Shown in pieces: positions 18,100 to 60,944 of a stretch of DNA of 64,000 nt (the stretch's first letter is position 1; each line of letters opens with the position of its first letter). Position numbers and translations under genes: made by a program. The notes beneath the pieces are model-generated. The model worked only from the letters and a program-made list of their open reading frames with translations. It ran no database searches and was not told the origin of the DNA. Source of the stretch: Octopus sinensis (lineage: Eukaryota); assembly GCF_006345805.1 (NCBI RefSeq), contig NC_043021.1:13702001-13766000 (forward strand). Reading direction: 5' to 3'.

Positions 18100-19070
18100 T
18101 TCTCATCATCTTTGTTTAACATCTGCTTTCCATGCTGGCATGTGTTGGATGGTTTGACATGGAGCTGGCTAACAGAGAGCTGTCCAGACTCCAGCTGACT
18201 GTTGTGGCATGGTTTTTACAGCTGGATGCCTTTCCTAATGCCAACCACTTAACAGTGTGTGCTGGGTGCTCTTTATGTGCCTTTGGCACAGGTGTGTTTA
18301 TGAAGCACTGGCATCTGAAGGGACAAGCCTGTACATGTGAAAGACAGCAGTTTTACTTAGCTTGATGTGTCTTATCAAGTACAGCAAATCGCCACATCTC
18401 CTGGTCCCTTGTCATTTCCTCAGTGAAGCCCAGCATCCAAAGATTCTTTCTCACCACTTCATCCCATGTCTTCCAGAGTCTACCCCTTCCACAGGTACCC
18501 TCTACAGTTGGAGCTCAGCACTTCTTTATGCAGCTGTCCTCATCCATATGCATCACATGACCAAACCAATGCAGTCTCCTCTCTTGCACACAACATCTGA
18601 TGCCTCTTTACTCAGTTTTCCTCTAAAATCCTTTTCACTCTGTCGTGCATGCACACTGACATTATTGATGCAGTGGAGCATGATAACTTCATTTCTTTCA
18701 AGCCTTTGCAAGTCCTCTGTAGTCAAAGCCCATGTTTCACTGCTATCTAACATAGCTGTACATACACAGGCATCATACAATCTGCCTTTCACTCTGAGGG
18801 AGAGGCCCTTAGTTACCAACAAAGATAAAAGCTCTCTGAATGTCACCCAGCCTGTTCTTATCCTAGCAACTACAATTTCAGAACTTCCACCACCACTGCT
18901 AACTTGATCTCCTAGGTAACAGAAGGCATCTACTACTTCTAATGATCCCTCTGAGCATTTGAGGGAGCCTATTTATGTCTGCGCATTTTTAGTGCTTGTT
19001 GTGCCTGCACATTTGGTACAAACAAAGTCTGTATTCTCCATTAGCCTTCCTTTGATATTGCTGCACTTCT
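18100..19070 (-). mobile_element. 5'-truncated RTE LINE (RT C-terminus plus 3' tail)
   Basis: ...TFRELLSLLVTKGLSLRVKGRLYDACVCTAMLDSSETWAL... continuing to the ORF end and tail. Closely similar to 7765-8185. Confidence 0.88.
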
Positions 19071-30541: not shown

Positions 30542-30625
30542 GCAGTCAGCGATGATGATGAGGCTGAAGAAGTGGCTGTCCAAGTTGAGAGTGGAGGTGG
30601 GTTCATGGAAGAATTTTTCGAACAG
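30542..30625 (+). CDS. STX1: Syntaxin-1 (neuronal t-SNARE) internal coding exon 2, phase 0/0, 28 codons
   Basis: T-rich tract + TTTACAG acceptor (AG 30540-30541), 84 nt translating to AVSDDDEAEEVAVQVESGGGFMEEFFEQ, donor CAG|GTCAGT. Matches the recalled squid/Aplysia syntaxin N-terminus (...AAVSD..EEVAVQV..GGGFMEEFFEQ) and the exon-2 boundaries of vertebrate STX1A. Confidence 0.93.
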
Positions 30626-30769
30626 GTCAGTTGAATCATGGCTTTCAATTTTTTCACTTTTTTTTTTCTTTTTTTATTTCCATCTCTTTCTCTTTATTTA
30701 CACAGCAAACCTTTCTTTTTGTCAATTACTCCTTCAGCCTGTTTATTTTTTTTTCTGTCCATCAGTGAG

Positions 30770-56500: not shown

Positions 56501-57247
56501 TGTGTGTCTGTGTATGTGCGCGCACACACACATGCGCACTACCCCTTCATGTACCATTAACTCATTTCTCCTCCCACTTCCTTTGTACTTTCCTGTCCCA
56601 CACAAGAAAAAAGTGAGAGAGAGAGAGAAAGCCATCCATCCGGCCATCCATTCATTCCTGCAGCCATCCATCAATCAATTAATGTAATGATGTCCAGCCC
56701 CCCCCCCCCCTTTCCGATAAAAAAACACAAACAATAACAGCAGCAAAAACAGGCTGCTGCTGATCACCTTTAAGGCCTGTGTTGTTACTTGAGTGTCCAG
56801 CCGGTCATTGTTATAATAATGTAGTAGCAGTGATGATAGTGTAGAGGCGGTGGTGGAGGTAGATGTTGGGGTTTACAGAGAGGATGGGACAGTGGCGAGT
56901 ATGGGGAGAGCAGGGGTTGCCAGCAGATTATCATGATGGTAGTAGCAGTGATGGTGATAGAGATTATGATGCTAATGATGGTGGTGGTGATGGTGGTGAT
57001 GGTGAGGTGTGTGAGGGGAGGGAGTAAGGGGTGTTGGGTCATAGGGATTATGGTGATGGTGATGGTGATAAAAGTAGGTGATATGGGTTACTGTAATGTT
57101 GATAGTGGTGATGGTGAGTACGATGCTGGCTGAAAGTTGTGCTGATGAGGATGTTGATAAAGATGATGGTCTTTTATTTTTCTGTCTTTTATTTGTTTCA
57201 GTCATTGGAGTGTGGCCATGCTGGGGCCAACACCTTGAATTGACCAC

Positions 57248-57415
57248 ATGATAAAATTAGCATACCACGAAGTTAGCATATCATAAAGTTAGCACGTCAT
57301 AAACTTATCACTTCATAAAATTAGCACATCATAAAGTTGGCAAATCAAAAAATTAGTTTGTCATAAAGTTATTATATCATTAAGTTAGCATGGCATCTCA
57401 AAGTTAGTGAATAAT
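57248..57415. repeat. ~17-bp tandem array (ATAAAGTTAGCATATC), resuming at ~57830-57960
   Basis: Directly visible on both sides of the LINE fragment. Confidence 0.82.
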
Positions 57416-57419
57416 AAAA

Positions 57420-57815
57420 TGAATGTATCATAGAGTTAACAAATACAATCATTCATCAACAGATGCTTGCGTAGTGTACTTAAAATTAGATGGCCCGACA
57501 CATAAGCAATATGGAGCTATGGCAAAGAACAAATGAAGTTTCGATTAGGGAGCAAATATTTAAGAAAAACTGAAAGTGGATTGGTAGCACAATTAGAAAA
57601 GGAACACCAACTGTAGCGAAAAGTGCTTTACAGTGGAAACTGGATGGATATAGAAGGAGAGGTAGGCCTTAGAATTCGTGGCGTAGGTCAACACAAAAGG
57701 AACGAGAGAAAGGGGGATATTCATGGCAGAGTATAAGTACAGAAGTGAAAAATTATGCAAGATGGAATTCAACTATAAGTGGCCTATACTCCGCGTTGGA
57801 GGGCTAAAGGTAGGA
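57420..57815 (+). mobile_element. Degenerate LINE RT C-terminal fragment (different family from the RTE above)
   Basis: With one frameshift: FINRCLRSVLKIRWPDT(I)SNMELWQRT...KWIG..IRK...ALQWKLDGYRRRGRP*NSWRRS. Confidence 0.78.
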
Positions 57816-58086
57816 CAAAAATCATAGAGTTAAGGAGTTATAAAGTTAGCATTTTATAAAGTTGACACATTCTGCATTTAGTCCATTATAAAGATAGTAT
57901 TTCAAAGTTAATACTTCAAGAGAGTATTACTCATAAAGTTGACACATCTTAAATTTAGCATGTTGATTAAAGATGATGGGCTCTGTTCCTTACTCACCAA
58001 TAAGAGTAGAAAGTGATTATTCTGTCATATGTTAAGATGTGTGTGTTGCAATTTGATGATGAAGAATTTTGTCGAATGTTGTTTTG

Positions 58087-58127
58087 TGCTAAAAATTTGT
58101 TTTTTTTTCTCCTATTTTTAGGTAAGT
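58087..58127 (+). promoter_or_regulatory. Candidate recursive splice site (3'ss directly abutting 5'ss)
   Basis: TGCTAAA branch-like motif, TTTGTTTTTTTTTCTCCTATTTTTAG (AG 58120-58121) immediately followed by GTAAGT (58122-58127). No other AG for ~55 nt upstream. Confidence 0.5.
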
Positions 58128-60944
58128 GTGTGTTTGGATTTCTTGCGAAAACTACTCGGGTGGCACAGCTGGAGATGGTTCTCACCGCCTGTCTTGTTGT
58201 GGAACAAAGCGGATGCCAAAAAAAAAAAAAAAGAAGTAACTAAGATGGTTTTTGGCTGTGGTTTTAGCTTCCTTCATTTCAAGTAACTTTTGTTTCTATT
58301 TTGTTGTTATCAATGTGATCAGTAGTGTCATTATTATCATCAGTCAATATGACCATGAACACCAGTCATCATTCATGATCATGAACACCAGTCATCATTC
58401 ATGATTGTCCAGTGTCTTCATCACCGTCCTGTGTCTTTGTTGTCCACTGTTAGCCTGACTCAGGGCATTCATCATTATTCCATATCATCATCATCATCAT
58501 AATAATCATTATTATTGTTTGTCACTTGAGTCATAAAACATACCAGTAATATACTGTGATACAAATTTGTGTTTTAAAGCAAAAAAAAAAAGTGAATAAT
58601 GTTTTGCAGTGTCTCTGTTGTTACTGTTTAAAAATATCGACCAAAATAGGAGGCCAGAAGATGGGGAATGGGGAAAAATAAAATTTCAATCCCTGCATGC
58701 AAAGCTAAATTTAACCCTAACCCCATTAGACACTGATCTCTTCTGTGCTGAAGGGGTGGTGGTGGTGGTGAATCTGAATGATTAGTGGAATTACACACAC
58801 ACACACACACACACATAGAAATACACATACACATATCTTCATGTATATATATATATCTGTGTGTATGTGTATATATGTGTATATATGTGTGTGTATATGT
58901 GCATGTGTGTGTGTATAGATGTGTATGTGTATGAATGTATGTCTATATGTGTGTATGTATATATGAGTATATATATGTGTGTATATATATATTATATTAT
59001 ATATACAAGTGTAATTATATTCCTTTTTTCAGAGCCTGCTTCCCTCAGCAATATGTGCTTGTGTCCTTGAGCACACCATTTTGTGTGTGTATGTGTGTGT
59101 GTGTGTGTGTGTTGTTATTGTCCATAGATTTGTGCACAACTCCTTAATCCATTAAAGATTATCCATATTAAATCCCCCCTACTTTTTATAGAACTAAGAT
59201 AATACAATTGAAAGGTACTAACGTCTGTGGTTATAAGAATGATGATGGTGGTGGTGGCGATGATGACGGTGGTAGTGGTGGTGGTAATAGTTGTAGTAGG
59301 ATGGGTATAGACAGACAGACAGACAACTGGGAAAATAAACAAGGGATCCTCCTCATGGTCACACTGTCTATTAGAAACAATGTCTAAAACTTCCTCATTA
59401 CCCCACTGTACTATCTCAAAAGAAGAAAAAATAAAGACAGTCTCATTGGATAATGTAGTCCTCTCTACCTATCCTTCTCCTCCTTCAATGCATCAGCCTC
59501 TCCACCTCTATCACTTCCTCCCTCTCCTTCAAATGCTCTTCTTTACTCACCCTTATTCCCTCCAGTCTTCTCTCTTACTCTATTTCTCTTTCTCTCTCTC
59601 TCTCTCTCTCACTGTACCTTTCTCCAACTCAGTTCTTCATTGCCTTGTCTTTTCTCTATTCTCATTGTCTCTAAAAAGTCTCTCGCAACCTGTCTCTCTT
59701 CCCTTTTTTCTCTCCCCTCTGTTGACTTCTCTCTCTCTCTCACTCTCTTTTGACCTAACCCTCTCCTTTATCCCTTCTTTTTCTCTATCCCCAGCTTCCC
59801 CTCTACTCTAAACCTTATCCCTCTCTTCAACTTACCCTCTCTTTACTTTCAACCTTTGCTTCTCTCTCTCACCCCTCTGTTGACTTCTCTCTCTCTCTTT
59901 CTCTCTGTTGACTTCTCTCTCTCTCTCTCCTCTGTTGACTTCTCTCTCTTTCATTCCTTCTCTTTTTACTGTCTCGCTCTCACTCTCTTTTGGCCTAACC
60001 CTCTCCTTTATCCCCTCTTTTTCTCTATCCTCAGCTTTCTCTTTGCTCTAAACCTTCACCCTCTCTGACTTCAACTTTTCCTCTCTTTACTCTCAGCCTT
60101 CCCCCTCTCTCTTAACCCTTTCCTCTCTACCTCTTTGTCTTCCTAATTCTAGTACCTCTTCCCCCTGTACACACACTACATCATGTATAAGAGACAGGAT
60201 CTTCTTAAGCTTTGACCCAGTTAAGGTCTGTAGGTGGTGGTGGTACTTGCACTGGTGGTGTCTCTCTCCAGTGTAATACTCTACTCTTAAAAATCACAGA
60301 CTGTATTGACCCAACTGTTCAGATATTAGACACTTAGAGTTCAAATCCAGCTCCAGGCAGTCTATTTTGAAACTTCCAAGTTCATGACCAGTTTCAAGTA
60401 ACCTTCTTTGAATCTTCCACGTTTACGTATGGCTCCAGGCAGTCTATTTAGAAACTTCCTGGTCACGAGTATTGATTTCACATCCAGCTGCAGACTGTCT
60501 ACTTCTAAACTCCCAAGTGACTGACATCCCATCCAGTGTCAGATTTGCCTCTCATCTACTTTGAACCTAGGGTCGAGCAGCCAGACATCAGCTGCTCTGG
60601 GTTACGAGGGTCTCATGAGCGTTTTTCTACGGCTCTTGTGGTTAGTTCTTGAGGTTGTTTTAACCACTGCAGCAAGACCAGGCTGGAGCAGTAGTTTCAA
60701 AGTGGTTCATGAAAAGGATTTTTGTTTTGTTTTTAAAGACTTATTCATTGTTTACTACTTGTGCATTTTTCTAAGTATTTTGACTGAGTTTTAGCATATC
60801 TGAACATTGTATACAACAGGTTCATTATTTATAAGTGGGATCCACCTTTGTGTCATGTTTTCTATCTTCTTGCCCATCTTGTCAAACAGCAAATCCTGGG
60901 TCATTGACATCATTGAGTATCAAAACAGGATATCTGTGTAGTGT

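What the first reader, a model, noticed from the sequence alone, without database searches (positions are those of the whole stretch)
58087..58241. Strong recursive-splicing (ratchet point) candidate in the giant syntaxin intron
Seen: branch-like TGCTAAA, a long pyrimidine tract, a ~55-nt AG-free zone, then TAG|GTAAGT, i.e. a perfect donor regenerated at the acceptor, 27.5 kb from the exon-2 donor, in unique sequence on the gene's strand. It is the only site of this quality I found. Downstream, 114 nt of GC-richer sequence (58122-58235) is stop-free in frame and ends at a weaker GTAACT, like an RS-exon (the count depends on a 15-A run). Established: AG|GT ratchet points subdivide long introns in Drosophila and vertebrate neural genes. 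I am not aware of a description in cephalopods. Inference: this intron is removed stepwise.
Basis: partly seen in the sequence, partly recalled or inferred. Interest (0 to 1): 0.74.

Follow-up and report, generated by a model that had tools for sequence, protein, structure and literature searches.

The report
Candidate recursive splice site, octopus syntaxin
A near-perfect back-to-back acceptor/donor splice signal lies 27.5 kb into a giant intron of an octopus syntaxin-1 gene; it is far better than chance gives for this stretch and looks like a fly-type ratchet point, but no RNA or cross-species evidence could be obtained, so its use is unproven.

Summary
At 58120-58127 (+) the sequence reads TAG|GTAAGT. 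It follows a 24-nt, roughly 90% pyrimidine tract, a 55-nt AG-free zone and a branch-like CTAAA 26-30 nt upstream. It lies on the sense strand, 27,496 nt after the donor of Octopus syntaxin-1 exon 2, in an intron of at least 33.4 kb.

The bare 8-mer occurs at chance level. The full acceptor-plus-donor motif scores 20.8 bits against 13.3 for the next best site on either strand. Only 0-0.75% of simulated introns reach that score.

It meets the sequence criteria of fly ratchet points: TT at -5/-6, a segment size within the known range, and a regenerated CAG|GTAAGT stronger than the native GTCAGT donor.

The "RS-exon" details carry no weight. All three frames are open, and the GTAACT donors are no better than 7-10% of random GTs.

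Annotated octopod isoforms join FFEQ directly to VEEIR, and no database protein contains the segment.

Conservation and RNA evidence could not be tested, because orthologous genes span 202-302 kb and no DNA was returned.

My verdict is a good but unverified candidate, with a probability of about 0.45 that it is a working ratchet point. If real, it would be a new member of a known kind.

The parts
30542..30625 (+). Syntaxin-1 coding exon 2 (AVSDDDEAEEVAVQVESGGGFMEEFFEQ), phase 0 at both ends. This is the upstream exon that would be ligated to the ratchet point.
   Evidence: It is an exact match to Octopus vulgaris/sinensis/bimaculoides syntaxin and 80% identical at nucleotide level to a decapodiform-like cDNA, L001.
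30626..30631 (+). Native exon-2 donor GTCAGT, with an unusual C at +3.
   Evidence: PWM score 9.3 bits, against 12.9 for the regenerated CAG|GTAAGT.
58087..58095 (+). Branch-point-like TGCTAAAAA. The candidate branch A residues lie 26-30 nt upstream of the AG.
   Evidence: It is a 4/5 match to yUnAy. These are the only A residues between -7 and -26.
58096..58119 (+). Polypyrimidine tract TTTGTTTTTTTTTCTCCTATTTTT, with TT at -5/-6.
   Evidence: The acceptor scores 11.9 bits, against 12.3 for the real exon-2 acceptor.
58120..58127 (+). AG|GTAAGT core, the putative ratchet point. The junction lies between 58121 and 58122.
58122..58235 (+). Putative cryptic RS-exon of 114 nt. Its body, 58128-58217, is 52% GC against about 35% in the flanks.
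   Evidence: All three frames are open. No protein homologue was found, and no intra-window repeat.
58218..58232 (+). A15 homopolymer, the longest A run in the window.
58236..58241 (+). Weak downstream donor GAA|GTAACT (4.1 bits).
58283..58288 (+). Second weak downstream donor CAA|GTAACT (5.0 bits). Using it would give a 161-nt RS-exon.

Best explanation
This is a candidate intronic ratchet point (recursive splice site) in intron 2 of an Octopus syntaxin-1 gene.

Proposed mechanism, inferred and not shown:
1. Transcription passes 58.1 kb. The strong acceptor (branch A near 58091-58095, T-rich tract, TAG) is recognised, probably helped by the GC-richer 100-160 nt downstream and one of the weak GTAACT donors acting as a cryptic RS-exon.
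2. Exon 2 (ending ...GAACAG) is ligated to 58122, removing the first 27.5 kb as a lariat.
3. The ligation creates CAG|GTAAGT, a perfect U1 site that is stronger than both the native GTCAGT donor and the downstream GTAACT donors.
4. That regenerated donor is used for the next step towards exon 3, so nothing from 58122 onward remains in the mRNA.

Shown: the sequence anatomy, its statistical rarity in this intron, the gene context, and the absence of the segment from annotated products.

Inferred: every splicing step.
For: - The motif is as described.
- The combined acceptor and donor score is 20.8 bits, against 13.3 for the next best site on either strand of the 64 kb.
- A site this good arises in 0/0.25/0.75% of order-1/3/5 Markov simulations and 0-0.33% of local block shuffles.
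- The acceptor (11.9 bits) is as good as the real exon-2 acceptor (12.3). The regenerated donor (12.9) beats the native donor (9.3) and the downstream donors (4-5).
- The site is on the sense strand of an intron of at least 33.4 kb, in a neuronal gene spanning 202-302 kb in octopods.
- TT at -5/-6 is present, as in 196/197 fly ratchet points. The 27.5-kb segment falls inside the fly range of 2.6-64 kb (bioRxiv 10.1101/006163).
- It lies in a repeat-free block of a window that is 44.5% intra-window repeat.
- Mature isoforms read FFEQ|VEEIR, as expected if the RS-exon is always skipped.
- In all five invertebrates tested by Shepard et al., sea urchin included, such motifs are 4-22 times commoner on the sense strand of large introns than on the antisense strand (PMC2773006).
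Against: - There is no RNA evidence of any kind.
- Conservation could not be tested.
- The downstream donor needed for RS-exon definition is at background strength.
- The acceptor is TAG rather than the preferred CAG.
- The putative RS-exon is in frame and stop-free, whereas fly cryptic RS-exons are generally out of frame (PMC8605326).
- The motif is built from low-complexity parts: a T run followed by GTAAGTGTGTGT.
- At about 1e-7 per nt, a genome of more than 2 Gb should contain roughly 100 equally good chance sites on intron sense strands.
- In vertebrates, whose repeat-rich long introns resemble octopus introns, such motifs show almost no sense-strand excess (PMC2773006), and only nine intronic ratchet points were firmly established (PMC8605326).
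Confidence: 0.45

Rival explanations
1. It is a chance juxtaposition. A T-rich tract, an AG and a GTAAGT followed by a short GT microsatellite happen to abut in a repeat-poor patch of a very long AT-rich intron. The site is not used, or is used only as occasional splicing noise, and has no function.
For: - The 8-mer core is at chance frequency.
- T runs of 9 or more occur 20 times in the window, and acceptor-grade tracts occur about once per 5 kb on the + strand.
- The RS-exon features are at background level.
- No transcript or protein trace of the segment was found among 5.8 billion proteins.
- Vertebrate long introns carry such motifs at about 0.1 per 100 kb on both strands with no function (PMC2773006).
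Against: The per-intron probability of a site this strong is only about 0.2-0.8%. No comparable site exists in the remaining 94 kb of control sequence, meaning the antisense strand plus intron 1. All tested invertebrates show strong sense-strand enrichment of such motifs.
Confidence: 0.4
2. It is the acceptor of an unannotated expressed or poison cassette exon (58122-58235 or 58122-58282), i.e. an 'expressed RS-exon'. Its inclusion would insert 38 residues into the syntaxin Habc domain, or would mark aberrant transcripts.
For: The acceptor is strong, the exon-like segment is GC-richer, and the 114-nt version preserves the frame.
Against: - All Octopus and Argonauta isoforms retrieved join FFEQ directly to VEEIR.
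- A six-frame peptide query of the segment found nothing.
- The downstream donors are weak, while the competing regenerated donor is perfect.
- The encoded peptide ends in a lysine run from a homopolymer and has no homologue.
Confidence: 0.06
3. This is an explanation of origin and does not exclude use as a splice site. The GC-richer ~95 nt plus A15 would be a retroposed fragment with a poly(A) tail, and the GTAAGT / GTAACT pair at its two ends would be an imperfect target-site duplication. The motif would then be young and lineage-specific.
For: A15 is the longest A run in the window and directly ends a segment of 52% GC set in 35% GC flanks. AGGTAAGT at the 5' edge resembles AAGTAACT at the 3' edge.
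Against: - No second copy exists in a window that is 44.5% repeat.
- There was no Rfam or tRNA match, no protein-level match and no metagenome match.
- The putative duplication has 2 mismatches in 8, which is weak.
Confidence: 0.1

Closest known systems
Drosophila intronic ratchet points (zero-nucleotide recursive splice sites with a cryptic, always-skipped RS-exon; Hatton 1998, Burnette 2005, Duff 2015, Joseph 2018, Pai 2018)
   Same: - A juxtaposed strong acceptor and consensus GTAAGT donor.
- A prominent T-rich tract with TT at -5/-6.
- Sense strand of a very long intron of a neuronally expressed gene.
- A segment length of 27.5 kb, within the fly range.
- A regenerated donor stronger than any downstream donor.
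   Different: - The lineage is a cephalopod mollusc, and no recursive splicing in molluscs was found in the paper library.
- The acceptor is TAG rather than CAG.
- The candidate RS-exon is in frame and stop-free.
- The downstream donor is at background strength.
- Ultraconservation and RNA intermediates, which define the fly sites, were not tested here.
Vertebrate RS-sites with RS-exons in long neuronal genes (Sibley 2015; Blazquez 2018)
   Same: The YAG|GT core lies in a long first-half intron of a long brain gene. The model is the same: exon definition first, then competition between the regenerated donor and the RS-exon donor.
   Different: Vertebrate RS-exons usually carry premature stop codons and have a recognisable downstream donor. 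Here there is no stop and only a weak donor. Vertebrate sites were defined by saw-tooth and junction reads, which are not available here.
Silent pseudo-splice sites and pseudoexons of long introns
   Same: It is an isolated good splice-site motif deep in an intron, with no trace in annotated mRNAs.
   Different: The combined motif is far stronger than any other pseudo-site in 128 kb of sequence counted on both strands.

Membership tests
Intronic ratchet point / recursive splice site | Juxtaposed strong 3' splice site (branch point, polypyrimidine tract, YAG) and strong 5' splice site around AG|GT | tested here: met
   The acceptor scores 11.9 bits against 12.3 for the real exon-2 acceptor, and the donor is GTAAGT. 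Chance probability is 0-0.75% per intron.
Intronic ratchet point / recursive splice site | Sense strand, deep inside a very long intron | tested here: met
   The site is 27,496 nt after the exon-2 donor. The intron is at least 33.4 kb and runs off the window. The gene spans 213-302 kb in Octopus assemblies.
Intronic ratchet point / recursive splice site | Ligation to the upstream exon regenerates a functional 5' splice site | tested here: met
   By sequence only. Exon 2 ends in CAG, giving CAG|GTAAGT at 12.9 bits against 9.3 for the native donor.
Intronic ratchet point / recursive splice site | Fly-type signature: TT at -5/-6 and an unusually prominent pyrimidine tract | tested here: met
   T is present at -3 to -7, and 19 of the last 20 nt are pyrimidines. 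The criterion comes from bioRxiv 10.1101/006163.
Intronic ratchet point / recursive splice site | A downstream cryptic donor that defines an RS-exon and is weaker than the ratchet-point donor | tested here: inconclusive
   Only GTAACT at +114 (4.1 bits) and at +161 (5.0 bits) are available. Of all GTs in the intron, 10% and 6.6% score as well. They are weaker than the ratchet-point donor, as required, but not distinguishable from background.
Intronic ratchet point / recursive splice site | The SA|SD core is much more conserved than flanking intron across species | not testable with these tools
   Orthologous genes were located in O. sinensis, O. vulgaris, O. bimaculoides and Argonauta hians. 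No DNA was returned because the gene ranges are 202-302 kb. Look-ups of ORFs spanning the site found nothing.
Intronic ratchet point / recursive splice site | RNA intermediates: exon-to-ratchet-point junction reads, segment lariats, saw-tooth nascent RNA coverage | not testable with these tools
   No read-level data were available. The only indirect check was a six-frame peptide query of the segment against proteins predicted from public assemblies, Logan transcript contigs included, which gave 0 hits.
Expressed RS-exon / cassette exon | The exon is present in some mature transcripts or annotated isoforms | tested here: not met
   All retrieved cephalopod syntaxin isoforms and the cDNA contig L001 join FFEQ directly to VEEIR. 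No protein contains the segment.

The most novel reading that the evidence does not exclude
The site is a working ratchet point. It would then be the first recursive splice site described in a mollusc or any lophotrochozoan. That would imply that the fly-type zero-nucleotide mechanism is ancestral to bilaterians, or was re-invented, and is used to process the giant introns of cephalopod neuronal genes.
Probability: 0.42. Interest if true: 0.6.

Novelty: new member of a known kind. Interest (0 to 1): 0.4.

Why it matters
Octopod genes such as this syntaxin span 200-300 kb for a 292-residue protein, and it is unknown how cephalopod neurons splice such introns accurately. Recursive splicing is documented in flies and in a few vertebrate genes. 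Motif enrichment suggests it also occurs in other insects and sea urchin, but no mollusc has been examined. A verified site here would extend the mechanism to a third major bilaterian branch. It would also give a concrete locus for testing whether ratchet points accompany intron gigantism. As it stands, this is one good motif and a hypothesis that public octopus genomes and total RNA-seq could settle quickly.

Tried and rejected
1. **Coding cassette exon.** Rejected as unsupported. All three frames are open, a six-frame peptide query found no homologue, and no isoform carries an insert.
2. **Structured or known RNA at the site.** No tRNA was found. No Rfam hit covered the site; the only nearby hits are sub-threshold miRNA models on a TG/TA microsatellite at 58.8-59.0 kb.
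3. **High-copy repeat or SINE.** There is no second copy in the window. A 22-mer from the segment found nothing in JGI metagenome contigs. A low-copy retroposed origin remains possible.
4. **U1 snRNA gene on the minus strand.** The reverse complement ACTTACCT resembles the U1 5' end, but there is no Rfam match.
5. **Fetching orthologous intron DNA.** Syntaxin look-ups returned no DNA because the gene ranges exceed 100 kb, and one isoform was not on record. Exact look-ups of three ORFs spanning the site found nothing.
7. **TE domains.** A Pfam scan of the longest window ORFs, looking for TE domains, found none.
8. **Paper look-up.** Sibley 2015 is not held in the library.
9. **Limitation of the scoring.** The absolute bit scores are approximate, but the rank of the site and the simulations use the same matrices throughout.

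Full report
**What is there.** The + strand reads ...tgtgctaaaaatttgtttttttttctcctatttttAG|GTAAGTgtgtgtttgg..., with the AG at 58120-58121 and GTAAGT at 58122-58127. The last 20 nt before the AG are 95% pyrimidine. The preceding AG is at 58063-58064, so the AG-free zone is 55 nt. The only adenines between -7 and -26 are the five at 58091-58095, inside TGCTAAAAA. That is a 4/5 match to the yUnAy branch consensus at a normal distance. Downstream lie about 95 nt of 52% GC sequence, set in flanks of about 35% GC. Only 6.5% of 90-nt windows in the intron are as GC-rich. After that come an A15 run (58218-58232) and GAA|GTAACT at 58236.

**Gene context.** Positions 30542-30625 encode AVSDDDEAEEVAVQVESGGGFMEEFFEQ, bounded by a good acceptor and by CAG|GTCAGT. 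This peptide is identical to residues 12-39 of syntaxin from Octopus vulgaris, O. sinensis and O. bimaculoides. It differs by one residue from Argonauta hians. A decapodiform-like cDNA contig (L001) is 80% identical over the exon and shows that it is coding exon 2, with exon 1 encoding MTKDRLAALKA. Neither exon 1 nor exon 3 (VEEIR...) is in the window. Intron 1 is therefore at least 30.5 kb, and intron 2 is at least 33.4 kb and runs off the end. The annotated gene spans 302 kb in two Octopus assemblies, 213 kb in a third and 202 kb in Argonauta. The site is on the sense strand, 27,496 nt into intron 2.

**Is it more than chance?**
- The 8-mer AGGTAAGT alone is not: 2 occurrences against 2.7 expected.
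- The whole motif is. With generic acceptor (-20..-1) and donor (+1..+6) weight matrices the site scores 20.8 bits. The next best AG|GT on either strand of the window scores 13.3.
- A site this good appeared in 0%, 0.25% and 0.75% of 400 order-1, order-3 and order-5 Markov simulations of the intron.
- It appeared in 0-0.33% of 600 shuffles confined to 30-, 60- or 120-nt blocks, which keep local T-richness.
- The acceptor half (11.9 bits) equals the real exon-2 acceptor (12.3). Only 11 other AGs on the + strand of the window reach it.
- The per-intron probability is thus about 0.2-0.8%.
- That rate is roughly 1e-7 per nt. It still implies on the order of a hundred equally good accidental sites on intron sense strands in a genome of more than 2 Gb. 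The genome size comes from my own knowledge of octopus genomes.

**The RS-exon argument.**
- It does not hold as evidence. All three + frames are open across 58126-58235, so the in-frame open reading, and its dependence on the A-run length, mean nothing.
- The GTAACT donors at +114 and +161 score 4.1 and 5.0 bits. Of all GTs in the intron, 10% and 6.6% do as well.
- They are weaker than the regenerated donor (12.9 bits), as the recursive model requires, but they are not detectable above background.
- The local GC rise is a mild point in favour of an exon-definition unit.

**What it is not.**
- No tRNA or Rfam family covers it.
- It has no second copy in a window of which 44.5% is intra-window dispersed repeat. 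The whole 58-59 kb kilobase is repeat-free.
- A 22-mer from the segment is absent from JGI metagenome contigs.
- A query made of all six reading frames of 58122-58218 found no protein among 5.8 billion, including proteins called on Logan transcript contigs and NCBI isoforms.
- Every cephalopod isoform retrieved joins FFEQ directly to VEEIR.
- So it is not an annotated or detectably expressed cassette exon. That is what a fully skipped cryptic RS-exon predicts, and equally what an unused site predicts.
- A retroposed origin remains a low-probability idea with no positive support. It would make the A15 a tail and GTAAGT / GTACT-like GTAACT an imperfect target-site duplication.

**What could not be done.** Conservation is the most informative test after RNA data. 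The orthologous genes were located in four octopod assemblies, but their DNA is not returned for gene ranges above 100 kb. Exact look-ups of ORFs spanning the site found nothing.

**Comparison with the known.**
- Fly ratchet points are juxtaposed acceptor/donor motifs with a prominent pyrimidine tract. They have TT at -5/-6 in 196 of 197 cases, segment sizes of 2.6-64 kb and strong conservation of the core (bioRxiv 10.1101/006163).
- They occur in 63% of fly introns longer than 40 kb (PMC6110457).
- They require a cryptic downstream exon that is always skipped, poorly conserved and usually out of frame. More than 500 are known in flies, against nine firmly established intronic ones in mammals (PMC8605326).
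- The candidate meets every sequence criterion I could test, except that its cryptic-exon donor is at background level.
- Shepard et al. counted such motifs per 100 kb of large introns against the complementary strand. The sense/antisense ratios were 21.7 (fly), more than 10 (mosquito), 8.0 (beetle), 4.0 (bee) and 8.2 (sea urchin), but 0.9-1.5 in eight vertebrates. Background was about 0.1 per 100 kb (PMC2773006). No mollusc was included.
- I found no paper describing recursive splicing in cephalopods or other lophotrochozoans.

**Probability.**
- If octopus behaves like the tested invertebrates, a sense-strand motif of this strength in a long intron is real in well over 80% of cases.
- If octopus behaves like vertebrates, whose repeat-laden long introns its genome resembles, the figure is perhaps 10-25%.
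- Weighting the two regimes about equally, and discounting for the weak cryptic-exon donor and the low-complexity make-up of the motif, I put a functional ratchet point at about 0.45. An unused chance motif gets about 0.40. The remainder goes to an unannotated or poison exon and other readings.

**Verdict.** It is a well-defined, cheaply testable candidate rather than a finding. If confirmed, it would be a new member of a known kind in a lineage where the mechanism has not been described.

Noticed in passing
L001:105-3560 (Logan SRR31864756 contig, 3871 nt): This decapodiform-like syntaxin transcript follows the normal coding sequence up to ...IRKTQ, then diverges (LFIKAVTDFRR, stop). It is followed by a separate 987-aa ORF with no Pfam match. 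It could be an alternative 3' end, a retained intron carrying an unknown element, or a chimeric assembly.
   Followed up: partly
window 30626-30631: The native donor of syntaxin exon 2 is GTCAGT, with the rare C at +3. It is 3.6 bits weaker than the donor that ligation to 58122 would regenerate.
   Followed up: partly
window 1-64000: 44.5% of the window is covered by dispersed repeats that recur within the window itself. Several families carry splice-site-like ends: 40607 and 40809; 44111 and 54703; 12056(+), 26053(-) and 25754(-). No long ORF in the window has a Pfam domain.
   Followed up: partly
window 57245-57960: A 16-bp tandem repeat (CACATCATAAAGTTAG, about 9 copies at 57245-57390), with degenerate copies extending to about 57960, ends roughly 130 nt upstream of the candidate branch point.
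   Followed up: no
window 58790-59010: A TG/TA microsatellite produces many sub-threshold Rfam miRNA hits (mir-3149, mir-5014, mir-297 and others) on both strands. All are far below the gathering scores and look like compositional artefacts.
   Followed up: yes
P0012/P0013 (ENA contigs of 42 and 135 kb) and P0086 (Logan): In some non-cephalopod relatives the FFEQ|V(D/E)EIR junction has no intron: the genomic ORFs P0012 and P0013 read straight through it. P0086 shows a short in-frame intron of about 72 nt at the same phase-0 position. The intron that exceeds 33 kb in Octopus is therefore absent or tiny elsewhere.
   Followed up: no
window 1-30541: Syntaxin exon 1 (MTKDRLAALKA) is not found upstream in the window, so intron 1 is also at least 30.5 kb. 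Its best AG|GT motif scores only 13.3 bits, at 18291.
   Followed up: partly
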